Shown piece after piece: positions 3,796 through 64,000 of a stretch of DNA of 64,000 nucleotides. Where the stretch lies: positions 62,001-126,000 of IMG/VR virus record IMGVR_UViG_3300031952_000001; one strand, written 5' to 3'. Under the pieces are notes generated by a model that saw only the letters and a list, made by a program, of their open reading frames with translations, was not told the origin of the DNA and did no database searches. A program made the translations under genes and the position numbers. Positions within the stretch are counted from its first letter, which is position 1. Each line of letters starts with the position of its first letter.

Positions 3796-4054
3796 GAATA
3801 GGTACCGCGAGGTCGTGCGGGCGGCCCTGGAATGCCTCGGAGACGAGCTTCTGCTGGAGGACGCGGACGTGTTGTGTGAGTACCTCGTGCTGCGCTTCTT
3901 GAAGACGTCCCCGAGGGTCACCTCGGGGTCCTCTCTGGAGGACTCGCTCGTGGAGCTTCAGGAGTTCGTCCGGAAGCTCTACCCGGTGCTCCTCACGTTC
4001 GTGTCCATGGTCAACACGTCCGCGATGCCGCGGTCGGAAAGTGCCAGAGCATGA
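3773..4054 (+). CDS. hypothetical protein
   Basis: ATG overlaps the recA end and the stop overlaps the next ATG. Confidence 0.6.
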
Positions 4055-34408: not shown

Positions 34409-35593
34409 ATGATCCGCACCTGCAAAGTGAAGCTCGGTCGTGCGCCAAAACAGGAGGCGAAGCTCACTTACGTTTTGGGTCTCTGTTGTGACCTCTACAA
34501 CGCAGCTCTCCAGCAGCGACGGGATGCCTGGGCTAAGCAGAAGGTCTCGCTTTCGTACTATGCGCAGACCAAGGAACTCACTCAGCTCCGTGCAGATGAT
34601 GAGGAGTACCGGCGGCTGCCGGCTCAGATGACTCGCATGACGTCACTATACCGCGTAGATAGGGCCTTTCAGGGGTTTTGCGGACGGTGTAGACGCGGTG
34701 AGAATCCCGGCTTCCCTCGGTTCCGCAGCCGAGATCGTTTCTCTACTTTGATGTTCTCTACGCAGGATTGGCGCATCAAGGGCAAGAGCCTGATATTGAA
34801 GAACGATGCAGATCCTATTGTCTTGCAAATGCGTAACACGATTCATCATGAGGGCCAGATCAAAGGTCTTCGTGTTGTCCGAAGTGCAACGCGATGGTGG
34901 GCGCATTTTCTTGTGGATGTAGGCCCTACCCCAGCTGTAAAGAAGTCCGATCACGGCGTCGGGATCGACGTTGGTCTTCGAACTTTCGCGACTCTGTCCG
35001 ACGGTAACGTCGTCGAACATCCGCGGTTCTTGAAGCAGAGCCTGGAGCAGCTGAAGTCGGTCCAGCAGGAGCTGAGCCGGAAGAAGAGGGGCTCCAAGAA
35101 CCGCGCGAAGGCGAAGCTCGTCGTCGCGCGGGTACACGAGAAGATCGCGAATCGTCGTCGAGACTTCGTACATCAGACCGTGTCCTCCTTGGTGAAGAAG
35201 TACGACGGGTTTGCGCTGGAGAAGCTCGACGTTTGCGCCATGACAAGCACGGAGCGCAAAGTCGAGGGTTTGGACAAGAAGCAATCTCGTGGTCTCCGAA
35301 GGGGGATCATGGACTCTGGCTGGTCTCTGTTCGGTGCACACCTGGCCTCCAAAGCGGAAGAAGCTGGGCTGCCGGTTGTGCACGTCGATCCGAAAGGCAC
35401 TTCGCAGAGATGTTCGGCTTGCGGAACCATAGTGCGAAAAACACTTCGGGACCGTGTGCACGAATGCTTTGCCTGTGGTCTCGTGCTGGATCGGGATGAG
35501 AACGCAGCCAGGAACATCTACGACCTGGGGCTCAGGTCGGCGTCCGGAAGCGCAGCAACAGCTAGTTGTGCTGAAGGCGCGGAGGTTCTGTGA
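34409..35593 (+). CDS. tnpB: TnpB RNA-guided endonuclease (IS200/IS605 family), no TnpA
   Basis: LYNAAL, PRFRS, RuvC residues GIDVG, FALEKL and DRDENAARNI, zinc finger CSAC/CFAC. Confidence 0.93.
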   Translation: MIRTCKVKLGRAPKQEAKLTYVLGLCCDLYNAALQQRRDAWAKQKVSLSYYAQTKELTQLRADDEEYRRLPAQMTRMTSLYRVDRAFQGFCGRCRRGENPGFPRFRSRDRFSTLMFSTQDWRIKGKSLILKNDADPIVLQMRNTIHHEGQIKGLRVVRSATRWWAHFLVDVGPTPAVKKSDHGVGIDVGLRTFATLSDGNVVEHPRFLKQSLEQLKSVQQELSRKKRGSKNRAKAKLVVARVHEKIANRRRDFVHQTVSSLVKKYDGFALEKLDVCAMTSTERKVEGLDKKQSRGLRRGIMDSGWSLFGAHLASKAEEAGLPVVHVDPKGTSQRCSACGTIVRKTLRDRVHECFACGLVLDRDENAARNIYDLGLRSASGSAATASCAEGAEVL

Positions 35594-39344: not shown

Positions 39345-39713
39345 GGGCCGGAAAGGTTTCGACAGCGGATGTGACGGTGTTCACTGCGTGTACCGCTTGT
39401 AAGTCAGCGGTTTAAAACGACTTTCAACAGACAAATGCCGATGCAGATGTCATCCCCTTCCCGAAGATGGCCGTTCCGTCGCTCCAGCGAGAGGCGGCTT
39501 AGGGAACGTCGGACGTGCGAGGTGCTCGTAACTCGCACGGCCGGCGCAATTCGAGACGAGCAACCCACGGTTTGACAGGTCGCACCGAGAAGCAGCCTGG
39601 ACCCTGGGAGTGCAGTCGTGCGGCACTCTCTGAGACCTTCAGCGCGACCACACACGTAACGAAGTGAACGCTCGACTCTACTGGACGGGGTTTCGATACC
39701 CCCCGGTCCACCA
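39345..39713 (+). ncRNA. ssrA: tmRNA (transfer-messenger RNA)
   Basis: 5' GGGCCGGAAAGGTTTCGAC; 3' GACGGGGTTTCGATACCCC-CCGGTCC-ACCA; acceptor stem with G3.U wobble; tag ORF 39437-39502 reads ADADVIPFPKMAVPSLQREAA*. Confidence 0.92.
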
Positions 39714-40192: not shown

Positions 40193-40264
40193 TGCGGGGT
40201 GGTCAAGTGGCAAGACACCAGGTTCATACCCTGGAGACCGTGGGTTCGAATCCCATCCCCGCTA
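40193..40264 (+). tRNA. tRNA-Met (CAT), 1:72 mismatch
   Basis: Anticodon arm CCAGG-TTCATAC-CCTGG; T arm GTGGG-TTCGAAT-CCCAT; CCA not encoded. Confidence 0.9.
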
Positions 40265-40267
40265 CTA

Positions 40268-40433: not shown

Positions 40434-41045
40434 ATGGTGCATTCTCTACGAGAACAGGCCGTCACCCTTCGAGAGAAGGGTCTTTCTTATTCCGAGATAA
40501 GAGATCGTCTAGGCATCGCAAGAAGTACCCTTAGCTACATGCTGAAAGATATTGTTCTTACGGAAAAACAGAAGAAACGATTAGAAAAGAAGAAGAAAGA
40601 CGGACAGAAAGTTTTGCGGGCTTGGTCCGAGACTCAACCTCCAGAGGTCCTAGCAGCTGTTAGCTCCCGTGGAGGGAAAGTGTGCCAGGAGCGTCATTCG
40701 GAGGCTCTTCGTAAGCACTTGTCCTTGGGTTGGAAGGCTGCCATGCTGACTTATCGAAAGGATGAGCTGCCTATTAAAATTTCTTTAGAAAAAATCTATA
40801 ATAGAGTTTTTTCCAAAGAACTGATAGGTAGGCGGGCCATAGACTTCGCATGTAAAGATCTTCTTATAGAACACACATCAGACCCCACCCACGGAGTGTT
40901 TGATCTCGTTAGGAGGTTTGAAGACGTTGTTTCTGATCCTCGCAAGAAGATAGCCTATCTGGATGTTTCCAAAATAGGTCCTTCTACTAGGAAACGGTTG
41001 GAGAACCTCGGCGTCCTGGTTTTAGATTTTCGGGCACTGGCCTAA
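40434..41045 (+). CDS. HTH plus PD-(D/E)xK-like putative homing endonuclease
   Basis: LREKGLSYSEIRDRLGIARSTLS; IDFACKDLLIE; AT-rich; stop codon lies inside tRNA-Pro. Confidence 0.5.
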   Translation: MVHSLREQAVTLREKGLSYSEIRDRLGIARSTLSYMLKDIVLTEKQKKRLEKKKKDGQKVLRAWSETQPPEVLAAVSSRGGKVCQERHSEALRKHLSLGWKAAMLTYRKDELPIKISLEKIYNRVFSKELIGRRAIDFACKDLLIEHTSDPTHGVFDLVRRFEDVVSDPRKKIAYLDVSKIGPSTRKRLENLGVLVLDFRALA

Positions 41046-41104
41046 CCTGGTAAGGCACATGCTTTGGGTGCATGGGATTCAGGGTTCAAATCCCTGGTGT
41101 CCGA
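41031..41104 (+). tRNA. tRNA-Pro (TGG)
   Basis: Acceptor CGGGCAC/GTGTCCG; anticodon arm CATGC-TTTGGGT-GCATG; T arm CAGGG-TTCAAAT-CCCTG. Confidence 0.93.
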
Positions 41105-41136
41105 CCCAAATGATCTCAAACCGCTCATTTTCCCTC

Positions 41137-53430: not shown

Positions 53431-53612
53431 ACCGCGAGGATGATGATCCCACTCGTCCGATTACGTTAATCCCCAGACCCCGCTGCGCCAAGCCTCCAGA
53501 GTCCCCCTGCGCCTTCAAGGACGAGGAGGGGTTCTGCTCTAAAAGATATACCACTTGCCGATGGAAAGCTCTCTCGAACCCTCCATCTAGGTCGAAACGC
53601 GATCAATCCTGA
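53427..53612 (+). CDS. small Cys-rich hypothetical protein
   Basis: ATGA overlap; last + strand gene before the strand switch. Confidence 0.45.
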   Translation: MNREDDDPTRPITLIPRPRCAKPPESPCAFKDEEGFCSKRYTTCRWKALSNPPSRSKRDQS

Positions 53613-53697
53613 GCCCTCCAGGAGCCGTTCTAAGGCCCTGCCGGCGTTCAGGCTGTCCGAGTGCGGGTTTTTGGTCGAAAGGCTTAGAGGGGCTGCG

Positions 53698-53907
53698 TCA
53701 GGAGTTCCTGTGCCGGGTAGCGTTGTACTCCTCCCAAGCGGTCGAGAATTCTGAGTAGTTTTCCCAGACTGCGTAGAGGTGGCCGCACTTGGGGCAGAAC
53801 TTGTTCTGATCTTCGGGCTTGGTCCAGAAAGACGAGTGCGGACCCGGGTGATCTTCCCAATGGTATCCGCAACTTAGACAGCGGAGCTTGGCGAGCTTCT
53901 CCTTCAA
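53698..53907 (-). CDS. small zinc-ribbon protein
   Basis: CLSC ... CPKC; SD GGAGG before TTG. Confidence 0.65.
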   Translation of the reverse strand: MKEKLAKLRCLSCGYHWEDHPGPHSSFWTKPEDQNKFCPKCGHLYAVWENYSEFSTAWEEYNATRHRNS

Positions 53908-53916
53908 GGACCTCCC

Positions 53917-54228
53917 TCAGTGCCCGTAATTGAAGCCGTACCTGAACCTTCGAATCTTGTCACCGTCTTCGTGGTCTGTGAACGTGAACTCACGTCCAAA
54001 GCTGCCTCAACAGCCCTCGGCGGCGATCTCCTTGTAGGCCTCCATCTCTTTCTCGTTCCCCACCTCCGCGAGGCGAAAGTGGCTGGTGCACGCATAGCCC
54101 TCCCGGTGGACCTTGGCGATCCGGGCGGTTAAGAAGTCCGCGAGCTTTGGGTTCTTGTACCGCTTGAAGATCCACTCCCAGGTGGGACCGAGGTAGGAGT
54201 CCCGGTCGAAGCTCTCCTTGCGGCTCAT
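53917..54228 (-). CDS. candidate selenoprotein (UGA at 54009-54007 read as Sec; ...AEGC-U-GSF...GFNYGH)
   Basis: Reading through the TGA gives 29 more sense codons ending at the next gene's SD; a SECIS-like hairpin follows the UGA. Confidence 0.65.
53976..54001 (-). promoter_or_regulatory. bacterial SECIS-like hairpin
   Basis: mRNA UGA-GGCAGCUUU-GGACGUG-AGUU-CACGUUC: 7-bp stem, apical loop 16 nt after the UGA, G at loop position 2. Confidence 0.55.
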
Positions 54229-54231
54229 GGT

Positions 54232-54426
54232 TTAGACCTTCTCATCGCCGGGAACCGCCACGCCCGCCTTGATGATCTCCAGGCAACGTTCGTAGGTGCA
54301 CCTCTGGAGTCCGCAACAGAACGTGCACCAAGGGTTCCTCGAAACCTCCTTGGATCTGTAGCGGCAGGTCTTGGCCTCTTTCCGCCAGTCCAGGACAGCC
54401 TTGCCGTACTTTCGTTTCGGGATCAT
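54232..54426 (-). CDS. small Cys-rich protein
   Basis: Operon-coupled ORF. Confidence 0.55.
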   Translation of the reverse strand: MIPKRKYGKAVLDWRKEAKTCRYRSKEVSRNPWCTFCCGLQRCTYERCLEIIKAGVAVPGDEKV

Positions 54427-54429
54427 CGT

Positions 54430-55038
54430 TCACCTCACTTGGCCCCTGCCGGTACCGTTGCAGTCGGGGCAGGTCGTGTACCCCGGAGTCACGCAGCATT
54501 CGATCCCCGGGAGAGATGCTCCTTGCGCCCCGTAGGCCTGTCCGCTTCCCTTGCATCGAGGACAGCTCCGGTAGTAGACGTCGAGGTCCTCATCGCCCAG
54601 CTCTTCCCGTAGCCGCGCGTTTTCGGTTTCCAGGGAGGCCAGTGACTTCTCACCGAGCCGAGCTGCCGCCTGGAGCGCCTCGATTCGGGATTCCCGGAGA
54701 CGCATTCCCGCTATGGCAGAATTGAGTTCTCTTTGGGCGAGTTCCAGAGAGAGGCTGATCTCTGCCGTCATCGCACGCGCAGCGGCGAGGACGTGCTCCG
54801 CAGCCTCACCGATAGTCTCGTTGTCGTCCGCCGCCAGCGCAGACCGGGCTTCCTCGATCTGCGTTTTGCAAGCCATGAGGTCATCGAAGACGAGGTCCCG
54901 CTCCTCTTGGATCTGCTTGATCTCGGCCTTGTACTGGGCCTCGATCTCGTGGATCGCGATCCACACCCGACCTTGAGGGACGGTTGTGCCGTACAGAAGA
55001 TCCGTGATCCTGTTTCTGATCTCGTTGAGGTCCATCAT
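54430..55038 (-). CDS. coiled-coil protein with a C-terminal DnaJ-type zinc finger
   Basis: CPRCKGSG, CPDCNGTG. Confidence 0.7.
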   Translation of the reverse strand: MMDLNEIRNRITDLLYGTTVPQGRVWIAIHEIEAQYKAEIKQIQEERDLVFDDLMACKTQIEEARSALAADDNETIGEAAEHVLAAARAMTAEISLSLELAQRELNSAIAGMRLRESRIEALQAAARLGEKSLASLETENARLREELGDEDLDVYYRSCPRCKGSGQAYGAQGASLPGIECCVTPGYTTCPDCNGTGRGQVR

Positions 55039-55289
55039 CCCACCTTCTTTGCCTTGCCCCAGCAGTCGTCACACAGTTCGAAAAGCTCGTCGTCGCACCC
55101 GTAGCACCACCCGACCGTGCGCCCACAACCCGGGCACACGAACGTCCCGCCGCAGTCGTGGCCCCCGGGCCGGAACCTGCCCTTCTTGTCCCTCTCGGGC
55201 GGGACGAACGGGGTGAGCAGGTAGCGTCGATAGTAGCAGCCCGGCTGATGAATGGCTTGAGGCACTAGCCGTTTCCCTTCTCCATCAAT
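55035..55289 (-). CDS. small Cys-rich protein (start uncertain)
   Basis: CPGC..WCYGC..LCDDC; 3' part of track ORF 55035..55445. Confidence 0.45.
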   Translation of the reverse strand: MDGEGKRLVPQAIHQPGCYYRRYLLTPFVPPERDKKGRFRPGGHDCGGTFVCPGCGRTVGWCYGCDDELFELCDDCWGKAKKVG

Positions 55290-55572
55290 CCACCTCCTTC
55301 GGCACCGTGCGGAACGCCTCGCAGAAGTTCTCGTAATCGACCGTGTTGTCGCCCGTACCGCTCGGGAGCTGCCGCAGCCGGTTGATGGCGTCCTCGAACG
55401 TCGTGGTGTACGAGCACCACTCGTCGTAGAGGCGCACGACACCATCCTTCATGAGATCCTCGGTGCAGCAGACGCAGGTCGGCCCCATGTCACCGAACCC
55501 CATCCCCACCCTGTTGAGCTGCCGCGTTAGTTCGTCCCGGAGCTTCTCTCGCTGCGATCTGATTTCTCCCAC
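55285..55572 (-). CDS. hypothetical protein
   Basis: Operon-coupled ORF. Confidence 0.6.
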   Translation of the reverse strand: MGEIRSQREKLRDELTRQLNRVGMGFGDMGPTCVCCTEDLMKDGVVRLYDEWCSYTTTFEDAINRLRQLPSGTGDNTVDYENFCEAFRTVPKEVD

Positions 55573-55581
55573 AGTGCCCTC

Positions 55582-55767
55582 CTACAGATCCAGCAGCTCG
55601 TCGAGGGCTGCCTTCACGTCCGGGTGCTTCGGGCACTCGGGGTTGAAACAGGCCTTGCCGGTCGGCTCGTTCGGATCGAGCCCCTTCTCGGAGCACTCCT
55701 TGGCCGTGTAGGCATCCCGGATGTAGAGCGTCGTCAGCTTCCCTCCGCAGCGGTCACAGTTCTTCAT
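55582..55767 (-). CDS. small zinc-finger protein
   Basis: CDRC ... CFNPEC. Confidence 0.6.
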   Translation of the reverse strand: MKNCDRCGGKLTTLYIRDAYTAKECSEKGLDPNEPTGKACFNPECPKHPDVKAALDELLDL

Positions 55768-55770
55768 GGT

Positions 55771-55992
55771 CTACTCCTCGTCCTCGTGATTGTCGCCGTA
55801 GCGGTCCTCATCGTATTCATCGTCATCGGGACCCTCATCGTCATCGGGACCCTCATCGTCATCGGGACCCTCATCGTCATCGGGACCCTCATCGTCATCG
55901 GGACCCTCATCGTCATCGGGACCCTCATCGTCATCGGGGCCCTCATCGTCATCGGGGCCCTCATCGTCATCGGGACGTTTGTAGATGTCCAT
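55771..55992 (-). CDS. 73-aa hyper-acidic repeat protein (PDDDEG)x8-PDDDEY
   Basis: SD AGGAG; first gene after promoter 56040-56067. Confidence 0.7.
   Translation of the reverse strand: MDIYKRPDDDEGPDDDEGPDDDEGPDDDEGPDDDEGPDDDEGPDDDEGPDDDEGPDDDEYDEDRYGDNHEDEE
55813..55974. repeat. 18-bp tandem repeat (8 full copies plus 1 degenerate)
   Basis: Unit [AG]CCCTCATCGTCATCGGG, head to tail with no spacers. Confidence 0.97.
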
Positions 55993-56039
55993 GATCTTCT
56001 CCTTGTTCAGCGAGGGTCAGCTCGCTTCTCCTACTTGGG

Positions 56040-56067
56040 AATATAACTACTATAGTGAGGCTGTCAA
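56040..56067 (-). promoter_or_regulatory. early-type promoter
   Basis: TTGACA-N16-TATATT. Confidence 0.75.
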
Positions 56068-56070
56068 GAG

Positions 56071-56340
56071 CTAACCGCAGAAATCCTGCATGAACTTCGA
56101 GCGCCTCGAAGCGTAGGCTTGCGCTAGCTCGTACACGTAAGCATTTGCGTACTCGGGACCGTGCTTGTCTGTGAGGAGTTTTCTCAGTTGGTTCAGTGCC
56201 GTGGAGACGGAGTCACTCCCGGAGAACGACCGCGCCATGAGCATCATGAAGACCTTGAATTCCGGGGGCACATTGACCCCGGGAGACTTTACGACCGGCT
56301 CACTTGGTCTTGTGGAGTCGGTCAAGCAGGGCTTTTTCAT
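56071..56340 (-). CDS. hypothetical protein
   Basis: ORF ends just before a promoter. Confidence 0.5.
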   Translation of the reverse strand: MKKPCLTDSTRPSEPVVKSPGVNVPPEFKVFMMLMARSFSGSDSVSTALNQLRKLLTDKHGPEYANAYVYELAQAYASRRSKFMQDFCG

Positions 56341-56608
56341 CCTTCAGTTCCTCCGGTGTCGGGACGTGGCAAGTGCGCCTATACGTGTTCAAATTGCAGT
56401 TGCAACCCGCGCCGAATGCGAGATAGAATTTCATACGCTCTTTCACCTTCGTATCGGGCTCTTCGACGTACTTTCCGCACACCCACCGAGTGCCGTCCCA
56501 CAAGAGGTGCGGGCACCCGTGCCACGCTGCCCAATCTTCGAGCTGGTAGAAACTGCACGGACTTTTGCGGCAACAAAATCCGCAACCTATACACTCGTTC
56601 GATTTCAT
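56300..56608 (-). CDS. YkgJ-like cysteine-cluster protein
   Basis: CIGCGFCCRKSPC..CPHL..CGKY. Confidence 0.6.
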   Translation of the reverse strand: MKSNECIGCGFCCRKSPCSFYQLEDWAAWHGCPHLLWDGTRWVCGKYVEEPDTKVKERMKFYLAFGAGCNCNLNTYRRTCHVPTPEELKDEKALLDRLHKTK

Positions 56609-56844
56609 TCTTGCACTTCGACTTCATACTCTTCTATGATGTGGGCGTTGATAAGAACCCATGCCGTACTTCTGATATCCGACGAACCCCGGCGGAGGTA
56701 ATATTCTCTAACCCAACGGAATGCCGGAGCCCATTGTCCGTCTATGAGTGCGAGCTGGCAGTCGTCGGGGAGCCCGAGCTTCTCTGCTCTTTCTAAGAGG
56801 TCGTCTCCTTGGACGATACGGTGCATCTTGACTTTCAAAGTCAC
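56605..56844 (-). CDS. hypothetical protein
   Basis: Overlap-coupled ORF. Confidence 0.55.
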   Translation of the reverse strand: MTLKVKMHRIVQGDDLLERAEKLGLPDDCQLALIDGQWAPAFRWVREYYLRRGSSDIRSTAWVLINAHIIEEYEVEVQE

Positions 56845-56999
56845 TTTGCTCTCGTCGGCTGGAGGTTGAGGACGTCACCCAATTTCGGCAACCAGGATCG
56901 TACCCTCTTCTCGACCGGCTCTACCGGCTCGATCTCCTCGACCAGCTCTTCGAGCGCCAGCTTGTCACTCTTCGCACGTCGTTTCTTCTCGGTGTCCAC
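56841..56999 (-). CDS. 52-aa hypothetical protein (not in the ORF track)
   Basis: SD AGGAGG, GTG start, MDTEKKRRAK...; follows promoter 57017-57044. Confidence 0.55.
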   Translation of the reverse strand: MDTEKKRRAKSDKLALEELVEEIEPVEPVEKRVRSWLPKLGDVLNLQPTRAK

Positions 57000-57016
57000 G
57001 CTGTCCTCCTACCTGG

Positions 57017-57044
57017 AATGTAACCACTCGGGAGAGGCTGTCAA
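57017..57044 (-). promoter_or_regulatory. early-type promoter
   Basis: TTGACA-N16-TACATT. Confidence 0.8.
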
Positions 57045-57050
57045 GGGCTA

Positions 57051-57272
57051 CTACCAGGAAAGAATACCCACCTTGCGCGTGCCCTCTCCGTCACTCACGT
57101 CGTCCATTGGGAATCCGTCATTTACCCAGCCTTTATCGGACTCCCTACGAAGGCTCTGTACCTCACAGGAATGCTTCCCTGCATGACCGGCTTTCCGTGT
57201 GCAATAGAACTCCACGAGGGCATCGGGGCCTATCGATGCATTCTTTACGAATTGGTCGCGGCACAGTTTCAT
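57051..57272 (-). CDS. hypothetical protein
   Basis: Operon-coupled ORF. Confidence 0.5.
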   Translation of the reverse strand: MKLCRDQFVKNASIGPDALVEFYCTRKAGHAGKHSCEVQSLRRESDKGWVNDGFPMDDVSDGEGTRKVGILSW

Positions 57273-57514
57273 TTCAGCCCCCTATCTGCCCCGACGAACA
57301 GACCCATTGCTGCCGCCATGACCAGCCGCGCGTTGGCTCGCTTCTTGTCCTTCTCGTGCCACACCTTCCGCTGGGATTCCTTCTCCTCTTCGGTCAGGCC
57401 CTCCCACCACTTGCGCGCGTCTTCTCTCTTGGCCTCCTCGGCGGCGGCCTTGCGCGCGATGCTCTGAGCTGCACGCTCCTCTCGGGTTGCCGCTCGACGT
57501 CGCGCCTCGCCCAT
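57269..57514 (-). CDS. basic hypothetical protein
   Basis: MGEARRR start; operon-coupled. Confidence 0.6.
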   Translation of the reverse strand: MGEARRRAATREERAAQSIARKAAAEEAKREDARKWWEGLTEEEKESQRKVWHEKDKKRANARLVMAAAMGLFVGADRGLK

Positions 57515-57518
57515 CGGT

Positions 57519-57794
57519 CTACCTCACCGCGTTGCCGGTCTTCGTGAACCGGACCTTCTCCAGAGCCACGAGCACGTCTCCCAGCTCCCGCCGGGCCATC
57601 TCCATGACGCGGATCGCCTCGGCTACCTGCGCCTCGTCGGTCGCGCCCTCGTCGAACGTGTCCTTGACCTCCCGGGCGATGAAGAGTGCCAGCGTGTCCC
57701 CCAGGCTGCCCTCGTCGCCTTCCTCGAAGGACGCCTTCACCAGCCCGTCCGGGTATCCCTCGTCCACGATCTCGATCAGCTTGTTCAGGTCCAT
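57519..57794 (-). CDS. acidic hypothetical protein
   Basis: SD AGGAG; follows a promoter. Confidence 0.7.
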   Translation of the reverse strand: MDLNKLIEIVDEGYPDGLVKASFEEGDEGSLGDTLALFIAREVKDTFDEGATDEAQVAEAIRVMEMARRELGDVLVALEKVRFTKTGNAVR

Positions 57795-57843
57795 GTTCGT
57801 CTCCTTGTTCAGTGCGAGTAGTCACCCCGCATTTCCTTCTACC

Positions 57844-57871
57844 AATGTAACCATGCCTGTCGGGGAGTCAA
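57844..57871 (-). promoter_or_regulatory. early-type promoter with a leader hairpin (loop GTGACTA)
   Basis: TTGACT-N16-TACATT; hairpin at 57814-57830. Confidence 0.8.
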
Positions 57872-57889
57872 GGGCCGGGTCGGTCGATT

Positions 57890-58642
57890 CTACTGTCCCT
57901 CGTAGGAGTACATCTCGGCCTCGGAAGCGAGGTTCGAACGGAACTCCTCGCGCTTCTCGTCGATGGCCTCGACGACCTTCTCCTCGAACTCCTCGGGAGT
58001 GAGCCCCTGCTCGACGTAGCTCTCGGTCAGCTCGGTGTACCACCAAGCCTCGTCGGCTACGGGGTCGGGGCACTGGAGATCTTTCTTGTCCCTCTCGGCG
58101 TTCTCCTTGGCCTCCGCGCGCAGTCGGGTCATGACCTCTTCGGTCAGCTCCTTCAGGTGCACGTCGTCGATGTCGAGTGTCTCCAGGGCCTCCTCCCGCC
58201 AGGTGTCCTCGTCGAAGTCCCTGTCGGTGCCGTCCAGGCTGTCCGCGCATTCCCGGCACCCGTCCGCCCGCTCCTGGAGCATCTCGCCCGTGCTGCCCTG
58301 CTGGAGCCCTTCGGGCATGTTGTTCAGCTTCTCCTCGCAGTCGTCCGCGAGCGAGTTGTACTCTTCCACGAGGTTCTCGATCTCGCTCACCAGCTCGTCC
58401 AGATCCGTGATGTTCGTCAGCTCGGACACCCGGTCGTTCAGATCGTAGACCTGCGACAGGAACTCCGAGTTCGTCTTGTCCGACGCCTTGAAGTCGCAAT
58501 CCCCATGGGTGCAACGGATCTTCCGACCACCGAACTTGATCTTGAGCCACCGGTAGGGATCGCCCTTTCTGATTTCGACCCCGCACTTCCCGCAGGTGCC
58601 CTGGTCCTTCTGAGCCTTCGCGACGTGGTTGATCTTCGGCAT
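57890..58642 (-). CDS. zinc-finger plus acidic coiled-coil protein
   Basis: CGKC..CTHGDC; very acidic C-terminal half. Confidence 0.75.
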   Translation of the reverse strand: MPKINHVAKAQKDQGTCGKCGVEIRKGDPYRWLKIKFGGRKIRCTHGDCDFKASDKTNSEFLSQVYDLNDRVSELTNITDLDELVSEIENLVEEYNSLADDCEEKLNNMPEGLQQGSTGEMLQERADGCRECADSLDGTDRDFDEDTWREEALETLDIDDVHLKELTEEVMTRLRAEAKENAERDKKDLQCPDPVADEAWWYTELTESYVEQGLTPEEFEEKVVEAIDEKREEFRSNLASEAEMYSYEGQ

Positions 58643-58643
58643 C

Positions 58644-58856
58644 TCAATCCTCCTCCGGCTCTCCCGCTACCGGCAACCCGAACAAGAATCCCGGACCGTT
58701 GCCTTCCTCATCGCGCGACACCTCGATGACGAACTCCTCACCCTCCTTGGTTCGCACGGTGAACCGGGGGAACTCCGCACCCCCGTCCACATCCACAATC
58801 GTCGCCCCTTCGAGCTGGGCATAGTACCTCTTGTAGAACTCGCTCCTGCGGTGCAT
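58644..58856 (-). CDS. hypothetical protein
   Basis: SD GGAGG; follows a promoter. Confidence 0.65.
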   Translation of the reverse strand: MHRRSEFYKRYYAQLEGATIVDVDGGAEFPRFTVRTKEGEEFVIEVSRDEEGNGPGFLFGLPVAGEPEED

Positions 58857-58890
58857 CTCAGTCCTCCAGGTTCTCTTCTTGCCTACCCCT

Positions 58891-58918
58891 AATGTAACCA
58901 TCCCTAGCAGGGAGTCAA
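58891..58918 (-). promoter_or_regulatory. early-type promoter
   Basis: TTGACT-N16-TACATT. Confidence 0.8.
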
Positions 58919-58922
58919 GGGG

Positions 58923-59159
58923 CTATTTGTACTTCGTGGTGAGGGCGCGGAGCGCCTCCTGCCCACACAGGGAGATCCGGCTCGCCCACATGCCGACCAG
59001 GCTCTCGGCGGCGCTCGCCGCGTGCTGTAGGTAGGTCGCCTCGTCGTATGCCTCTATGTACCGATCCTCTTCGGTCGTCGCCGCGAGCGCCCTGTCGTGT
59101 GCGAGACGCGCCCGCTCCCGGTACATCTCATACGTCTCCTCGTGCGTCGTGACGGGCAT
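58923..59159 (-). CDS. hypothetical protein
   Basis: SD GGAGG before MPVTT. Confidence 0.55.
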   Translation of the reverse strand: MPVTTHEETYEMYRERARLAHDRALAATTEEDRYIEAYDEATYLQHAASAAESLVGMWASRISLCGQEALRALTTKYK

Positions 59160-59160
59160 C

Positions 59161-59373
59161 TCAGTCCTCCTCGCCGCTCTCGACGATGTCTTCGATGCGG
59201 AAGGTGGCGGTCCACTCCTTGCCGCAGTCGTGGCACTCGACGGTGACCTTCTTGACGTCGTCCTCGTCGGCACTGTCCTCGACCGTGTGCTCCCAGGTGT
59301 TGTACTTCCCGCAGTACGGGCACTTCGATCCGCCGCTCGCCAGGCACTCGTCTTTGAAGTTCATCTTCAACAT
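59161..59373 (-). CDS. small zinc-ribbon protein
   Basis: CPYC ... CHDC. Confidence 0.65.
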   Translation of the reverse strand: MLKMNFKDECLASGGSKCPYCGKYNTWEHTVEDSADEDDVKKVTVECHDCGKEWTATFRIEDIVESGEED

Positions 59374-59392
59374 GTTCGTTTCTCCTGCTTGG

Positions 59393-59420
59393 AATGTAAC
59401 CACTAGGGAGAGACTGTCAA
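59393..59420 (-). promoter_or_regulatory. early-type promoter
   Basis: TTGACA-N16-TACATT. Confidence 0.8.
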
Positions 59421-59605
59421 GAGGTGTGGTTCTTAATCTCTTCTACCGCCCACAACCTGTCGAGGAGGTCATCCTCGTACTGTGGATCTTCATGGATCTC
59501 GGATTCGCCCTTCTCGGCTTTGTATCGGGCTTTGTTTGCGTCTTCGGCTTCGACGAGGACACGCTGCCGCCAGATCTCCTTTTTCGTCACTATGAAGAGT
59601 GGCAC
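59417..59605 (-). CDS. hypothetical protein
   Basis: GTG start; 3' part of track ORF 59417..60175. Confidence 0.5.
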   Translation of the reverse strand: MPLFIVTKKEIWRQRVLVEAEDANKARYKAEKGESEIHEDPQYEDDLLDRLWAVEEIKNHTS

Positions 59606-59823
59606 TAGACGCCCGTCTCCAGGTGCTCTTCCTGGTTCGGATCGTCCTCTTCGAGGGCGAACTGCGCATCCTTCAAGAGATCGAGGGCGGCCTTGAGTGC
59701 CTCGTCGGCGCACTGGGTAGAGTTGTCCTCGACCTTGAGCCCGTCCCGGACCTCGTCGAGCTTCTGAGACAGCCTCCAGATCTTGTCCGCGAGCATCTGC
59801 CTGTCGGTCATCGGCTTGCCCAT
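59605..59823 (-). CDS. acidic hypothetical protein
   Basis: Operon-coupled ORF. Confidence 0.6.
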   Translation of the reverse strand: MGKPMTDRQMLADKIWRLSQKLDEVRDGLKVEDNSTQCADEALKAALDLLKDAQFALEEDDPNQEEHLETGV

Positions 59824-59832
59824 GACGCCCTC

Positions 59833-60384
59833 CTACCTCTCCGTGAAGACGACCTTCGAAGTCTTCTTCTGCTTGGCCTTGTTCGGGGTCGTGAGGACGA
59901 ACTCCTTGCCTCTCCTCTTGAATGTCATCCCGTCCTCGAAGGGCATCTCGGTGCGGAGCATCCCGGTCTTGCCCGTGCCCTTGGGGTCGTCTCCCGCCGT
60001 CCACATGGACGTGAGGGTGAACTTCTGGTCGTGCAGGGTGTCGCCCATCTGCCTCGGGATGCCGTAGACGCCGCGCACGGATGAATCCCTCTTGTACGTG
60101 AACCGCACGGCGAACCCCGTTCGCAGGTGGAAGAGCACCGCGTTGATCCTGTCGGCGGTCGTCTTCGTGATCCACCCGCCGGAATTCACCACGACCGACA
60201 TGACCGCGTAACCCGCCTTGTTCAGGTACAGCTTCACGACGTCCGTCGTGTGGTACCGGACCGCGATCATGAGCCCCTCGTTCTCCAGGCCGAGAACCTC
60301 GACCTTCGTCACCTTGGGGTAGCCCCCCAGAGCCCGCCGGATCTCCTTCTTCAGCTCGTTCGCGACCTTCATTCTCGCGTCCAT
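59833..60384 (-). CDS. hypothetical protein
   Basis: SD GGGAGG; VRYHTTDVV..NSGGWITKTTADRIN. Confidence 0.7.
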   Translation of the reverse strand: MDARMKVANELKKEIRRALGGYPKVTKVEVLGLENEGLMIAVRYHTTDVVKLYLNKAGYAVMSVVVNSGGWITKTTADRINAVLFHLRTGFAVRFTYKRDSSVRGVYGIPRQMGDTLHDQKFTLTSMWTAGDDPKGTGKTGMLRTEMPFEDGMTFKRRGKEFVLTTPNKAKQKKTSKVVFTER

Positions 60385-60418
60385 GATGTCCCTCCCGTTG
60401 TTCTTCTCGCCTATCCCC

Positions 60419-60446
60419 AATGTAACCATCGGGGAGCGGCTGTCAA
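60419..60446 (-). promoter_or_regulatory. early-type promoter (copy 1 of a duplicated cassette)
   Basis: TTGACA-N16-TACATT, identical to 60729-60756. Confidence 0.8.
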
Positions 60447-60449
60447 GTG

Positions 60450-60695
60450 CTACTCGTCGAGATCGTTCCCCTCGTCATCGAGACTGAGGAACTCGGGGTC
60501 GGAACCCTGCGCGATAAGCTCTTTCACCATTTCCGGCCCGGTGAGGCATTCCTCTTTCTCTCGCCGAACCACCCCGGAAGCCTCACCTTCGGAGATCTCG
60601 TGCGCGATACTGCTCAGGTTGCTCCTGGTGAAAGGGCCTTCGGTCAACACCTCGACCATGTAGGTCGTTTTGTAGAACTTGCGGTCGCTCGCCAT
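60450..60695 (-). CDS. acidic protein, paralogue of 62278..62532
   Basis: RKFYK..IAHEISEG..SGVV..KELIAQGSDPEF. Confidence 0.75.
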   Translation of the reverse strand: MASDRKFYKTTYMVEVLTEGPFTRSNLSSIAHEISEGEASGVVRREKEECLTGPEMVKELIAQGSDPEFLSLDDEGNDLDE

Positions 60696-60728
60696 GTTGT
60701 CCTCCCGTTGTTCTCTTTGCCTACCCCC

Positions 60729-60756
60729 AATGTAACCATCGGGGAGCGGCTGTCAA
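60729..60756 (-). promoter_or_regulatory. early-type promoter (copy 2 of the duplicated cassette)
   Basis: TTGACA-N16-TACATT. Confidence 0.8.
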
Positions 60757-60759
60757 GTG

Positions 60760-61251
60760 CTAGGCGGCGCGTTTCCTCGACAGCTCCATCCCGTACAGCT
60801 CAAGCCACGACGTGAGGCACTCCAGGCTGGTCGTGGACGCGGCGCATTCCCGCGCGATGGTCTTACAGGTGTCGTCGTCCAGGTTCTTCCCGGAGTCGTC
60901 TAGGAGCTTCCCCAAGGGGTCCGGGTCGTTCATGTCCACGATCCAGTAGTGACCGTCGAGCGTGTCTTTGCACGCCGCTAGATCGTCATGAAGGTTCGAA
61001 CCGGTGATCTGCTCGATTCCGTCCCGGAGCGTACCGCGCTCGTGGGTGCCCGGATTGGACCCTTCCCACAGGTCGTTGATCTGATCGTACAGCTCGGCCC
61101 ACCGGGCGTCGAACGCCTGTCGCTGCTCGGCCTCGGCCTGGCGCTTCTCACGCTCGGCCTTGCGGCGCTCGTCGGCGATCCGCCGCTCCTCGTCGCGGCG
61201 AAGCTCCTCGGCCCGGTCCAGCTCGATCTGGGCTTTCGTTCGGCGTGCCAT
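60760..61251 (-). CDS. hypothetical protein
   Basis: Operon-coupled ORF. Confidence 0.65.
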   Translation of the reverse strand: MARRTKAQIELDRAEELRRDEERRIADERRKAEREKRQAEAEQRQAFDARWAELYDQINDLWEGSNPGTHERGTLRDGIEQITGSNLHDDLAACKDTLDGHYWIVDMNDPDPLGKLLDDSGKNLDDDTCKTIARECAASTTSLECLTSWLELYGMELSRKRAA

Positions 61252-61252
61252 G

Positions 61253-61705
61253 CTAGGCCCCCTTCTCGACCGGCTTTCCGACCAGACAATCCCATGTCTC
61301 GGAGTTGCAGACGAGGTACTCGATGTGCTCCTCCATGACCTCTTCGTAAAGCCTCTGCGCCTCTTCGGGGTCGTCTGCCTTGGGGCGCGGCTCGACCGTG
61401 TAGGGGTGCCCCTTGATCCTGCCGTCGAAGTATTCGACGCGCGGCTCCTCGCGGTTCGCTTCCCGGAGGTACTCGTCCACCGCTTCCAGCTCTTCGTCGG
61501 TCAGGTCGCGCGTCGTGGTGAACGTGTGGCCGATGTAGTAGCACTCCTTGTTCGCTTGGAACGAGCAAATATGCACGTCCAGGTTCGCGTCGAAGAGGTG
61601 CGCCGAGAAGATCCGGTCCACACCGTCCGGGATGCCGTTGTAGAACTCCGTCTCATCGTCGATGAAGATCCGCAGATCCATCGGGATTTTCGTCTTCTCG
61701 TCCAT
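61253..61705 (-). CDS. acidic hypothetical protein
   Basis: SD AGGAG; follows a promoter. Confidence 0.7.
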   Translation of the reverse strand: MDEKTKIPMDLRIFIDDETEFYNGIPDGVDRIFSAHLFDANLDVHICSFQANKECYYIGHTFTTTRDLTDEELEAVDEYLREANREEPRVEYFDGRIKGHPYTVEPRPKADDPEEAQRLYEEVMEEHIEYLVCNSETWDCLVGKPVEKGA

Positions 61706-61752
61706 CGGGTTCTCCTTGTCGTTGCCGGCGGGTAGTCATCCCGCCTATCCCC

Positions 61753-61780
61753 AATGTAACCACCCCTAGCGGGCTGTCAA
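61753..61780 (-). promoter_or_regulatory. early-type promoter with a leader hairpin (loop ATGACTA)
   Basis: TTGACA-N16-TACATT; hairpin at 61728-61744. Confidence 0.8.
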
Positions 61781-61796
61781 GGGGTTGCGCGGTCTT

Positions 61797-62051
61797 TTAG
61801 TCCCCGTACAGGTGATTGAGCCGCTTGACGGCTGACTTCGACAGGCGACCGTTCCGCGCCGCGAAAGACCTCTCGTCGGGCCACAGATCGTCTGCGTAGA
61901 TGTCGAAATCGGAATCCCAACACGCGCGAATGAGCTTGATCGTCTCCTCGACCGAGAGATCGTCGAACACCTCCTCGTTCGTGGAATTCGCCACCTCGAC
62001 GAGCCGACGAAGGAACTCGATCCCGGTTTCTTCCTGTTTCTTCTCGGTCAT
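61797..62051 (-). CDS. hypothetical protein
   Basis: SD GGAGGG. Confidence 0.65.
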   Translation of the reverse strand: MTEKKQEETGIEFLRRLVEVANSTNEEVFDDLSVEETIKLIRACWDSDFDIYADDLWPDERSFAARNGRLSKSAVKRLNHLYGD

Positions 62052-62805: not shown

Positions 62806-62866
62806 AATGTAACACAGGCAAATCGGCGGTCAAGGGGCTTGACTCTCTTTTCCCGGTGGTTACATT
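62806..62866. promoter_or_regulatory. back-to-back divergent promoter pair
   Basis: Minus strand TTGACC-N16-TACATT (62833-62806); plus strand TTGACT-N16-TACATT (62839-62866). Confidence 0.8.
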
Positions 62867-62905
62867 TCCCGCTAGGCAGGGCAACGACCAAACGAGGAGG
62901 ACGAC

Positions 62906-63349
62906 ATGGCGGTCAACTGGACAGCGAAACCGGTTCTCACGGACGAGATGGACGAGGGTTTCCGTGTGGTAACGGTGGACGGGGTCAAGCTCAAGTGGTC
63001 GGGCACGCTAGACGTCCCGGATCTAGGAGAGCAAATCCACGTCACGTTCAACGGGTTCGGTCGTGGGTTCGTGCGCGGCTACTGCTACATGGACGGGTTC
63101 GCCGCGCTGCTCGTCGAGCCGGAGAAGTTGCCCGATTGGTACGTCAAGCAGTCAAAGACAACGCACTACAAGCCGGAAATGCCCATGAAGATCATCACCG
63201 TCTTCGGAATCGAATTCAAGACCGTAGATGATCCCTTCCGGTGCCGGTACGACGACTGCTCGAAGGGATACCCGGTCGCCACGGACGACGAACACGTAAC
63301 TTGCCCCGCGTGTCGGAAGGATATGGGCCTGCCTCCCTTGACAGCCTGA
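62906..63349 (+). CDS. hypothetical protein with a C-terminal zinc ribbon
   Basis: SD GAGGAGG; CRYDDC..CPAC. Confidence 0.7.
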   Translation: MAVNWTAKPVLTDEMDEGFRVVTVDGVKLKWSGTLDVPDLGEQIHVTFNGFGRGFVRGYCYMDGFAALLVEPEKLPDWYVKQSKTTHYKPEMPMKIITVFGIEFKTVDDPFRCRYDDCSKGYPVATDDEHVTCPACRKDMGLPPLTA

Positions 63350-63365
63350 AACCGGTGGTTACATT
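63338..63365 (+). promoter_or_regulatory. early-type promoter
   Basis: TTGACA-N16-TACATT. Confidence 0.8.
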
Positions 63366-63399
63366 GGGTAGCAGGGACAGCGAACAACGGGAGGGCAAC

Positions 63400-63639
63400 A
63401 TGGCAACACAGGTCATCGTGAAGAAAAAGAAGTTGTCGGACGGTTCCGAGGTGTTCAACGTTGTGCTCGTGTTCCCCCTTGGTGGTCGTGTGACGTGCCA
63501 CATGGACAGCGAGAAGTCGGCGGAAGATCTGGAATTCCAGTTCAACCGGATTTTCGATCCTGAGAAGACCGGGATACCCACCTTCGGGAAGGCGAACGGG
63601 ATCATCGAAATTTGGGTCGACGGCGACGACTTCAAGTAG
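63400..63639 (+). CDS. hypothetical protein
   Basis: SD GGGAGGG. Confidence 0.65.
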   Translation: MATQVIVKKKKLSDGSEVFNVVLVFPLGGRVTCHMDSEKSAEDLEFQFNRIFDPEKTGIPTFGKANGIIEIWVDGDDFK

Positions 63640-63645
63640 AAGCCC

Positions 63646-63673
63646 TTGACAGCCTGAAACCGGTAGTTACATT
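63646..63673 (+). promoter_or_regulatory. early-type promoter
   Basis: TTGACA-N16-TACATT; spacer nearly identical to that of 63338. Confidence 0.8.
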
Positions 63674-63709
63674 CCCAGCCAGGGGAAACGAACAACCGAG
63701 GAGGACCGC

Positions 63710-64000
63710 ATGAGCATCGGGGAGAAGGGCACGCTTCCGGCCGAAGTCGTCAACGATATGAAGAAGTCGGCACTCATGGGCGGCATGGTGCCCAAGTCGT
63801 TCGTCGAGTACCACCTGGCGCTCGCCAAGCGGGCGCTTCCGGCCCTGGTGAGCCGGTTCAGGGTCGAGATCGTGACGACGTTCGTCAAGTCGGGCGGGTG
63901 GTTCGACGGCATGAACAACCTGCGCGCGATCCTTCGGAAGTCGGACAACACGCTTCTGGAGATCGTGTGGTACGCATCGGACGGATCGGGCTACTGGATG
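63710..64000 (+). CDS. hypothetical protein, 3'-truncated by the window edge
   Basis: SD GAGGAGG; frame MSIGEKG... is open to the end. Confidence 0.65.
   Translation, partial: MSIGEKGTLPAEVVNDMKKSALMGGMVPKSFVEYHLALAKRALPALVSRFRVEIVTTFVKSGGWFDGMNNLRAILRKSDNTLLEIVWYASDGSGYWM

What the first reader, a model, noticed from the sequence alone, without database searches (positions are those of the whole stretch)
55771..55992. Hyper-acidic (PDDDEG)n mini-protein from an 18-bp tandem repeat: candidate DNA mimic with tunable length
Seen: 73 aa, more than half Asp/Glu, nine near-perfect repeats, strong SD, first gene behind a consensus promoter. Known: Ocr and several anti-CRISPRs are acidic DNA mimics. 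Inference: a polyanionic decoy whose length can vary by slippage, acting as a contingency locus.
Basis: partly seen in the sequence, partly recalled or inferred. Interest (0 to 1): 0.6.

Follow-up and report, generated by a model that had tools for sequence, protein, structure and literature searches.

The report
Variable acidic-repeat mini-gene of a phage
A tiny early gene of an uncultured 212-kb sediment phage encodes a floppy, extremely acidic peptide built from a six-residue repeat, and near-identical strains carry 9, 8 or 2 copies or lack the gene; whether it is a nucleic-acid decoy, a translation leader or a newborn gene with no role yet is untested.

Summary
ORF 55771-55992 (-) encodes 73 aa: MDIYKR, 8.9 PDDDEG units from an 18-bp array, and an acidic tail. 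It has 45 Asp/Glu and a net charge of about -42. It sits behind an 11/12 sigma70-like promoter and an AAGGAG Shine-Dalgarno.

The window belongs to a 211,982-bp IMG/VR jumbo phage from sediment. The ORF is the first cistron of the last unit in a leftward early arm driven by a repeated promoter cassette. This arm is a mosaic hot spot among strains.

Near-identical strains carry 73-aa (9 copies), 67-aa (8 copies) and 31-aa (2 copies) alleles. Others lack the cistron, with the same leader feeding the next Zn-ribbon gene directly. So length polymorphism is real and the gene is dispensable.

It has no homologues or family. Two predictors call it disordered, so it is not an Ocr-like rigid DNA mimic.

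My best guess (about 0.35) is a trans-acting flexible polyanionic decoy, like the acidic middle domain of SPO1 Gp44. The rivals are a young ORFan with neutral slippage (about 0.35) and a cis-acting DE/P-rich leader prone to ribosome destabilization (about 0.15). No RNA or protein evidence exists.

The parts
56040..56067 (-). Sigma70-like early promoter (TTGACA, 16 nt, TATATT). It is the last member of the leftward cluster of a repeated promoter cassette.
   Evidence: 11 of 12 matches; family of about 36 sites, 8 on the - strand between window 61780 and 56067; cassette conserved in L004, L007 and L012.
56009..56026 (-). 6-bp hairpin in the 47-nt leader.
   Evidence: centroid structure. The pairing is kept in the 82% relative L012 through a change on both sides. 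The energy is not better than shuffles (z = -0.3).
55999..56004 (-). Shine-Dalgarno AAGGAG, 6 nt before the ATG. In strain L007 the same motif serves the Zn-ribbon gene directly.
55771..55992 (-). Acidic mini-ORF of 73 aa (stop included in the coordinates): 45 D/E, net charge about -42, predicted disordered.
55817..55976 (-). 18-bp tandem array, 8.9 copies, coding PDDDEG. The first two units end in GGC, the next six in GGT.
55774..55779 (-). GAGGAG, the last two codons of the acidic ORF, which also serves as the Shine-Dalgarno of the next gene. The stop TAG is at 55771-55773 and the next ATG at 55765-55767.
55582..55767 (-). Downstream 61-aa Zn-ribbon mini-protein (CxxC...CxxxxC), the second cistron. 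It is present in all strains.
56071..56340 (-). Upstream 89-aa gene that ends just before the promoter. It was used as the anchor for finding alleles.

Best explanation
Shown. This is a canonical-looking but lineage-restricted and dispensable first cistron of one sigma70-type early transcription unit. It lies in the hyperplastic (mosaic) early region of an uncultured 212-kb sediment phage. It encodes a peptide that is almost entirely a PDDDEG hexapeptide array, predicted to be an intrinsically disordered polyanion. The array changes by gain or loss of whole 18-bp units. The likely cause is replication slippage or unequal recombination, and the phage encodes RecA/UvsX-like and SbcCD-like proteins. 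Sister strains therefore carry 9, 8 or 2 copies, and other strains have no such cistron.

Inferred. It is transcribed at once after infection by host RNA polymerase and translated. The product acts in trans as a flexible electrostatic decoy, a single-strand-like nucleic-acid mimic, for cationic nucleic-acid-binding host proteins. Candidates are RNA polymerase, nucleoid proteins, and restriction or other DNA-sensing defences. Charge and avidity would scale with copy number (about -14 for 2 copies, about -42 for 9). It would work like the disordered acidic middle domain of SPO1 Gp44, not like the rigid B-DNA mimic Ocr.
For: - Expression signals and frame.
- Early context: a repeated promoter cassette in divergent leftward and rightward clusters, and an arm of small ORFans.
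- Mosaic hot spot among strains that are 94-100% identical.
- Allele series: 31 aa in L004 and in run X3, where one contig skips exactly 126 bp; 67 aa in ENA ERZ27247989; ORF absent in L007, SRR9617604 and ERZ27247687.
- Extreme and unique acidity.
- Disorder predictions.
- A precedent for a disordered, 57% D/E, repeat-containing phage early domain that binds RNAP beta and beta' and is proposed to mimic ssDNA (PMC8208478).
- DNA-mimic anti-defence proteins are small, acidic and broad in spectrum (10.1101/2025.06.06.658234; T7 gp5.9).
- All three nucleotide variants inside the ORF are synonymous in this frame.
Against: - There is no evidence of transcription or translation; no RNA run holds the locus.
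- A strain with 100% identical upstream DNA lacks the cistron, so it is not needed.
- Copy number differs freely among near-identical genomes, which fits weak or no constraint.
- There are no homologues beyond its own alleles among 5.8 billion and 1.84 billion proteins, so purifying selection cannot be tested.
- Codon use is off the genome norm: GC3 is 0.60 against 0.81, and GAT is 59% against 32%.
- It has no anchoring or DNA-binding domain such as Gp44 has.
- DE/P-rich sequence starting at codon 7 is the class that aborts translation in E. coli (10.1101/2021.02.02.429294), so little full-length product may be made.
Confidence: 0.35

Rival explanations
1. It is a young ORFan or proto-gene with no selected function. 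A short GAY/GAR-rich open frame sits between a conserved promoter-leader cassette and the Zn-ribbon gene. It was inflated by neutral slippage of an 18-bp unit. It may be translated, but copy number drifts.
For: - It is absent from a strain with 100% identical upstream sequence, and from the 79-82% relatives L012 and L013, which carry other cargo behind the same or a similar cassette.
- The 9, 8 and 2-copy alleles occur in otherwise near-identical DNA.
- Units are 98% identical, so the expansion is very recent.
- No homologues exist anywhere.
- Codon use is atypical.
- ORFans next to repeated promoter cassettes are typical of phage hyperplastic regions (PMC2839356).
Against: - The expression signals are perfect, and the stop is placed so that its last codons form the next gene's Shine-Dalgarno.
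- The ORF-bearing allele recurs in several assemblies.
- All observed substitutions are synonymous, but there are only three.
Confidence: 0.35
2. It is a cis-acting leader ORF. The DE/P-rich nascent chain, which starts at codon 7 while the exit tunnel is nearly empty, destabilizes the ribosome (intrinsic ribosome destabilization, as in MgtL). The fraction of ribosomes that reach the stop 3 nt before the Zn-ribbon ATG would set downstream expression. That fraction could depend on Mg2+ or on ribosome state, and repeat number would tune it.
For: - PDDDEG units begin at residue 7, preceded by only six residues, and contain the small residue Gly.
- In E. coli, N-terminal DE/P-rich segments with small residues induce abortion, and risk is maximal at N-termini (10.1101/2021.02.02.429294).
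- The stop and restart spacing is 3 nt, and the next Shine-Dalgarno lies inside the last codons.
- The predicted long-range pairing of the two start regions is the same in both alleles.
Against: - The Zn-ribbon gene is expressed from the same Shine-Dalgarno without any leader ORF in strain L007, so the leader is not needed.
- No attenuator or terminator was found, and the folds are no better than shuffles (z = -0.7 and -0.4).
- The bulky residues I, Y, K and R before the motif counteract destabilization according to the same paper.
- Leader peptides are normally conserved; this one is not.
Confidence: 0.15
3. It is a DNA- or RNA-level element rather than a coding one, for example an array of 18-bp protein-binding sites (iteron-like) or a structured leader.
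For: The array is tandem, head to tail, and lies just downstream of a promoter.
Against: - No other copy of the unit occurs in the genome.
- Sister strains have only two copies or none.
- The RNA fold is not exceptional.
- Rfam gives only sub-threshold chance hits.
- Start, frame and stop are kept in every allele, whose sizes differ by multiples of 6 aa.
Confidence: 0.05
4. The copy number is an assembly artefact. The array exists, but '9' (or 8 versus 9) reflects short-read mis-assembly.
For: - k=31 contigs of runs X1 and X2 break at the array.
- The depth of the repeat unitig relative to the flanks is 2.3x and 3.2x, against 5.1x expected for 9 copies. That suggests about 6-7 copies or mixtures.
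- No raw reads were available.
Against: - The pure periodic stretch is 122 bp, which 150-bp reads and large-k assemblers can span.
- The 2-copy allele is seen in two assemblies and the absent allele in three or more.
- An independent ENA assembly gives 8 copies.
Confidence: 0.05

Closest known systems
SPO1 Gp44, acidic middle domain (residues 56-122)
   Same: Both are phage early or host-takeover products. Each has a disordered stretch with more than 55% Asp/Glu, no basic residues and internal repeats. The Gp44 domain is proposed to act as a flexible ssDNA mimic that binds RNAP (PMC8208478).
   Different: Gp44 is a 27-kDa three-domain protein with a folded DNA-binding N-domain. Here the polyanion is the whole protein. 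There is no sequence homology, and the function here is untested.
T7 Ocr (gp0.3) and ArdA-type structured DNA mimics
   Same: Both are first-expressed early genes and strongly acidic, and counter-defence is a candidate role.
   Different: Ocr is a folded dimer that displays carboxylates in B-DNA geometry. This peptide is predicted to lack any fold and has no Pfam or PHROGs match.
T7 gp5.9 (52-aa acidic RecBCD and MukBEF inhibitor)
   Same: Both are very small acidic phage proteins. gp5.9 acts by DNA mimicry (PMC9836394, PMC7617805).
   Different: gp5.9 is folded and non-repetitive. There is no homology.
MgtL-type DE/P-rich leader peptides (intrinsic ribosome destabilization)
   Same: Both are short upstream ORFs with acidic and proline-rich codons near the N-terminus, directly ahead of another gene.
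   Different: MgtL is 17 aa, conserved, and coupled to an attenuator. Here no attenuator was found, and the ORF is dispensable and variable.
ORFans flanked by promoter-early stem-loop cassettes (PeSLs) in T4-type hyperplastic regions
   Same: Both show repeated strong sigma70-like early promoter cassettes. Insertions, deletions and replacements of small ORFans between close relatives have boundaries at the cassette (PMC2839356; here).
   Different: This is a different phage lineage and a different cassette sequence. The hairpin lies in the leader, not in a terminator upstream of the promoter. Mini-circles were not examined.
Bacterial contingency loci and coding VNTRs
   Same: Both have a tandem repeat in a gene with copy-number polymorphism in natural populations.
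   Different: The unit here is 18 bp and in frame, so there is no phase (on/off) switching. It is in a phage, and no mutation rate or selection has been shown.
D/E-stretch hypothetical proteins of actinophages (e.g. Ilzat gp35)
   Same: These are phage ORFs with Asp/Glu runs that annotators have speculated mimic nucleic-acid charge (PMC5897797).
   Different: Those lie among DNA-metabolism genes and are conserved between phages. No hexapeptide VNTR is reported, and they are equally untested.

Membership tests
Ocr/ArdA-type structured DNA mimic | Large net negative charge. | tested here: met
   45 D/E against 3 K/R, charge about -42.
Ocr/ArdA-type structured DNA mimic | Stable fold that arrays carboxylates like the phosphates of B-DNA. 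| tested here: not met
   The AF2 single-sequence model has no secondary structure, pTM 0.12 and pLDDT about 62. The ESM Atlas model of the same sequence has pLDDT 0.23 and pTM 0.07. These are predictions only.
Ocr/ArdA-type structured DNA mimic | Sequence or profile homology to the Ocr or ArdA families. | tested here: not met
   No Pfam or PHROGs family matched, and no related proteins were found.
Ocr/ArdA-type structured DNA mimic | Binds and inhibits type I restriction-modification or BREX. | not testable with these tools
   This needs biochemistry, and the host is unknown.
Flexible polyanionic mimic (Gp44 middle-domain type) | Disordered stretch with more than 50% D/E and no basic residues. 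| tested here: met
   Residues 7-59 are 67% D/E with no K, R or H. Disorder is predicted.
Flexible polyanionic mimic (Gp44 middle-domain type) | Attached folded domain that brings it to DNA or RNAP. | tested here: not met
   Only 6 N-terminal and 14 C-terminal non-repeat residues exist, and there is no domain hit.
Flexible polyanionic mimic (Gp44 middle-domain type) | Binds RNAP or another nucleic-acid-binding protein. | not testable with these tools
   No complex prediction was run, because no partner can be named without the host.
Anti-CRISPR DNA mimics (AcrIIA4 or AcrIF2 type) | Homology to a known Acr, or an adjacent Aca-type HTH regulator. | tested here: not met
   There are no family hits, and the neighbours are Zn-ribbon and Cys-rich ORFans without an HTH.
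Contingency locus (phase-variable simple-sequence repeat) | Tandem repeat with copy-number polymorphism among close relatives. | tested here: met
   9, 8 and 2 copies, and absence.
Contingency locus (phase-variable simple-sequence repeat) | Repeat changes switch expression on and off, by frameshift or promoter spacing. | tested here: not met
   The 18-bp unit is in frame and downstream of the promoter and Shine-Dalgarno. All alleles keep start, frame and stop.
Contingency locus (phase-variable simple-sequence repeat) | Raised mutation rate and selection on variants. | not testable with these tools
   Only assembled contigs were available, not raw reads.
IRD leader peptide (MgtL-like) | DE/P-rich codons within about the first 12 residues of a short upstream ORF. 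| tested here: met
   PDDDEGPDDDEG runs from residue 7, and the stop is 3 nt before the next ATG.
IRD leader peptide (MgtL-like) | RNA switch or attenuator that couples abortion to downstream expression. | tested here: inconclusive
   The predicted pairing of the two start regions is not better than shuffles. No terminator-like site lies on the - strand.
IRD leader peptide (MgtL-like) | Conserved together with the regulated gene. | tested here: not met
   The Zn-ribbon gene occurs without the leader in L007-type strains.
PeSL-like mobile regulatory cassette (context, not the ORF) | Repeated strong sigma70-like early promoters in a region rich in ORFans that varies between close relatives. | tested here: met
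PeSL-like mobile regulatory cassette (context, not the ORF) | Terminator stem-loop as part of the cassette. | tested here: inconclusive
   Only a 6-bp leader hairpin downstream of the promoter was seen. No terminator-like site was found on the - strand in 54.5-57.5 kb.

The most novel reading that the evidence does not exclude
A free-standing, length-tunable disordered polyanion is a phage early effector. Its hexapeptide copy number, and so its charge and avidity, would be under diversifying selection in natural populations as an arms-race dial against host nucleic-acid-binding defences or RNAP. That would make it a protein-level VNTR counter-defence gene, born recently by repeat expansion at a mobile promoter cassette.
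Probability: 0.12. Interest if true: 0.75.

Novelty: new variant of a known kind. Interest (0 to 1): 0.35.

Why it matters
If the peptide is made and active, it would be the simplest nucleic-acid mimic yet seen. It would be pure charge on a flexible chain, with nature supplying a ready allelic series (0, 2, 8, 9 units) for dose-response tests.

If it is neutral, it is a clean snapshot of how a phage ORFan can be born and inflated by slippage beside a mobile promoter cassette.

If it acts in cis, it would extend ribosome-destabilizing acidic leaders to phage early operons.

All three outcomes can be tested cheaply with synthetic peptides and reporter fusions. At present nothing shows function, so the finding is a curiosity with a well-documented polymorphism rather than a discovery.

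Tried and rejected
- **Megablast, 4 kb against 50,697 phage records:** no match.
- **Exact two-unit DNA pattern in IMG/VR:** no match.
- **Word search with the 73-aa protein:** 4,937 candidates, none at E <= 0.01. That tool sees only proteins of 40-128 aa.
- **Full phmmer against 1.84 billion representatives:** 16 hits. All are unrelated periodic low-complexity proteins (GP-periodic repeats, several of them basic) except the 31-aa allele. One 112-aa protein (P0016) has PDDD[AV]G repeats but lies on a 2-kb contig with overlapping gene calls. I treat it as convergent.
- **tblastn of the 31-aa allele against phages:** one search was one base off (wrong frame) and is void. The corrected one search found nothing, but BLAST's low-complexity filter masks most of the query.
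- **ESM Atlas 'by structure' neighbours:** meaningless, because the model is disordered.
- **Rfam:** only sub-threshold hits. The C/D-box models are triggered by the GATGA of the repeat, and Mu-gpT-DE scored 20 bits against a threshold of 49.
- **PADLOC:** nothing relevant.
- **Antisense 140-aa 'LIVIGT' ORF (55624-56046, +) and the MTMRVP frame:** by-products of the repeat. They have no Shine-Dalgarno or promoter, and the repeat variants are non-synonymous there.
- **Paralogues or dispersed copies of the unit in the genome:** none.
- **The 77%-identical Zn-ribbon relative P0002:** its contig starts 78 nt upstream of the gene and no DNA could be fetched, so it is uninformative.
- **Depth-based copy numbers for X1 and X2 (about 6 and 7):** rough only.
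- **Complex prediction:** not used, because no partner can be named.
Read laying was given 1,201 letters.

Full report
**Observation.**
The - strand ORF at 55771..55992 encodes 73 residues: MDIYKR, eight full PDDDEG units, PDDDE, and a 14-residue acidic tail. Tandem Repeats Finder reports an 18-bp unit at 55817-55976 with 8.9 copies, 98% matches and score 306. This is the strongest short-period array in the whole genome. Asp+Glu make up 45 of 73 residues, net charge is about -42 and pI about 4.05.

A promoter-like site (TTGACA, 16 nt, TATATT; 11 of 12) lies at 56067..56040 on the same strand. The surrounding 3 kb holds 3 such sites against 0.8 expected from shuffles. AAGGAG sits 6 nt before the ATG. 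The stop TAG is 3 nt before the ATG of the next gene, a 61-aa Zn-ribbon protein. The last two codons, GAGGAG, are that gene's Shine-Dalgarno.

**Where it lies.**
The window is bases 62001-126000 of a 211,982-bp IMG/VR virus record rated complete. It is the same as metagenome contig Ga0315294_10000012. The runs that hold it are sediment or freshwater metagenomes, and none is RNA. The phage encodes a RecA/UvsX-like protein, SbcCD-like nucleases, a TnpB-like protein, a tmRNA and two tRNAs.

A conserved sigma70-like cassette (CTTGACAGCC ... GGTGGTTACATT) occurs about 36 times in the genome. Eight copies point leftward between window 61780 and 56067, and at least eight point rightward from 62839 onward. 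This is the picture of a divergent early region read by host RNA polymerase. The acidic ORF is the first cistron behind the last leftward cassette. Its 62% D+E is unique among first cistrons; the next highest has 28%. Its neighbours are small Cys-rich or Zn-ribbon ORFans without family assignment.

**Relatives and alleles.**
- **2-copy allele.** A second phage genome (IMGVR_UViG_3300036761_001580, 205,564 bp; L004) has the same promoter, leader, start, tail and stop. It carries only two units, giving a 31-aa product. The alignment shows a clean 126-bp (7-unit) difference plus one synonymous change. Run X3 carries this allele on a 21-kb contig that skips exactly 55816 to 55943. The exact 31-aa protein is on record from two assemblies.
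- **8-copy allele.** Gene tables around the identical upstream 89-aa gene show a 67-aa allele, one unit shorter than the window's, on a 26,941-bp ENA contig.
- **Contigs that break in the array.** One ENA contig ends inside the array. In X1 and X2 the k=31 contigs also break at the array. The repeat unitig is 2.3x and 3.2x as deep as the flanks, against 5.1x expected for nine copies. This hints at about 6-7 copies or mixtures, but it is only a rough measure.
- **Absent allele.** A third strain (Ga0315278_10001927, L007) is 100% identical over the 598 nt upstream, through the AAGGAG. It then goes after 9 nt straight into the Zn-ribbon ATG, so the acidic cistron is absent. The same arrangement is seen in a Logan contig and an ENA contig. 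It is not a simple excision product, because the junction and the first codons of the Zn-ribbon gene also differ.
- **More distant relatives.** Relatives whose upstream gene is 79-82% identical carry entirely different first genes. In L012 the cargo follows the same cassette, the same leader hairpin (kept through a change on both sides) and the same CTGAACAAGGAG motif.

The whole leftward arm is a patchwork of matching and non-matching blocks among strains that are 94-100% identical. This resembles the hyperplastic regions of T4-type phages, where ORFans are shuffled at promoter cassettes (PMC2839356).

**What the product would be.**
No family in Pfam, PHROGs or PADLOC matches. The word search found nothing. 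A full HMMER pass over 1.84 billion representatives returned only its own 31-aa allele plus unrelated periodic low-complexity proteins. The genome has no paralogue and no other copy of the unit.

AlphaFold2 gives no secondary structure (pTM 0.12). The ESM Atlas model of the identical sequence has pLDDT 0.23. The peptide is therefore best described as an intrinsically disordered polyanion, not a folded DNA-shaped protein.

**Mechanism.**
Three readings survive.

(a) *Trans-acting decoy.* An early, abundant, flexible polyanion could soak up cationic nucleic-acid-binding proteins. The nearest precedent is the disordered middle domain of SPO1 Gp44. That domain is 57% D/E, has no basic residues, contains internal repeats, binds RNAP beta and beta', and is proposed to mimic ssDNA (PMC8208478). 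Small acidic mimics such as Ocr and gp5.9 act broadly. The position as first early cistron in a variable accessory arm fits this reading, and so does the charge. Nothing else supports it.

(b) *Neutral proto-gene.* The evidence here is dispensability, free variation in copy number, near-identity of the units, orphan status, and codon use off the genome norm (GC3 0.60 against 0.81). Together these fit an ORF that arose and was inflated recently without selection.

(c) *Cis-acting leader.* In E. coli, DE/P-rich nascent chains with small residues near the N-terminus destabilize the ribosome and abort translation. MgtL exploits this for regulation (10.1101/2021.02.02.429294). This ORF starts such a sequence at codon 7 and ends 3 nt before the next start codon. 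Against this reading, the downstream gene works without the leader in L007, no attenuator is evident, and the predicted folds are no better than shuffles.

I put (a) and (b) at about 0.35 each and (c) at about 0.15. A DNA- or RNA-level element and a copy-number artefact get about 0.05 each. I commit to (a) as the working mechanism because it is the only one that explains why a complete set of expression signals is kept around the ORF in several strains. The margin over (b) is thin.

**Comparison with known systems.**
It is not a member of the Ocr/ArdA, gp5.9 or anti-CRISPR mimic families, having neither homology nor a predicted fold. It may work like the Gp44 acidic domain but lacks that protein's anchoring domain. 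It is not a contingency locus in the classical sense, because the unit is in frame and cannot switch the gene off. It is a coding VNTR with documented natural polymorphism. The context matches PeSL-type cassette-mediated ORFan turnover. I found no paper that mentions the repeat.

**Verdict.**
The feature is real and its length polymorphism is well documented, but its function is unproven. 'DNA mimic' is possible only in the loose, flexible sense. 'Contingency locus' is not supported. Interest is moderate to low until expression or binding is shown.

Read laying received 1,201 letters. Only table 11 was used.

Noticed in passing
window 39345-39713 (+), 40193-40265 (+), 41030-41108 (+): A phage-borne tmRNA (Rfam RF00023, 82 bits; ARAGORN gives a 21-residue tag peptide) lies next to tRNA-Met(CAT) and tRNA-Pro(TGG).
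   Followed up: partly
window 1456-3795 (+): The RecA/UvsX-like ORF is 779 aa. The RecA core (residues 39-212) and RecA_C (residues 719-771) are separated by about 500 residues. GC drops to 0.50 in 2001-4000. This is probably an intein or homing-element insertion.
   Followed up: no
window 34409-35593 (+): A TnpB-like protein (OrfB_IS605 plus a Cas12f1-like TNB domain; phrog_506 E 1.6e-86) sits inside the phage genome.
   Followed up: no
window 56067-61780 (-) and 62839-64000 (+), continuing to genome 129186: A conserved sigma70-like promoter cassette (CTTGACAGCC ... GGTGGTTACATT, spacer 16) forms divergent clusters around window 62.3 kb. About 36 such sites occur genome-wide.
   Followed up: partly
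window 53580-62000 (-): The leftward early arm is a mosaic hot spot. Among strains that are 94-100% identical, whole blocks are missing or replaced (for example window 56596-57535 against L007, and 57854-59157 against L004).
   Followed up: partly
window 53698-53907, 54430-55038, 55035-55445, 55582-55767, 56300-56608 (all -): There is a run of Cys-rich or Zn-ribbon mini-proteins. The 69-aa one has a weak hit to Lar-like restriction alleviation protein (phrog_6422, E 4.7e-4). The 202-aa one is a coiled coil with a DnaJ-like CXXCXGXG end.
   Followed up: no
window 56009-56026 (-); L012:3315-3331: The leader hairpin behind the cassette keeps its pairing in an 82% relative through a change on both sides (GCGAG/CTCGC against GCGGG/CCCGC). 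Its energy is not exceptional.
   Followed up: partly
genome G000:C1:39009-39500 (outside the window): A second perfect repeat, (TCGGAC)x14, encodes an (SD)n linker in a lipoprotein-like ORF (signal peptide ending in ...FAGC). It lies right behind another cassette-type promoter at genome 38937.
   Followed up: partly
window 55765-55992 (-): The two start regions (acidic ORF and Zn-ribbon gene) are partly complementary (CATGG, TCTAC and GTCC segments) and pair in the predicted mRNA fold of both alleles. The folds are not better than shuffles.
   Followed up: partly
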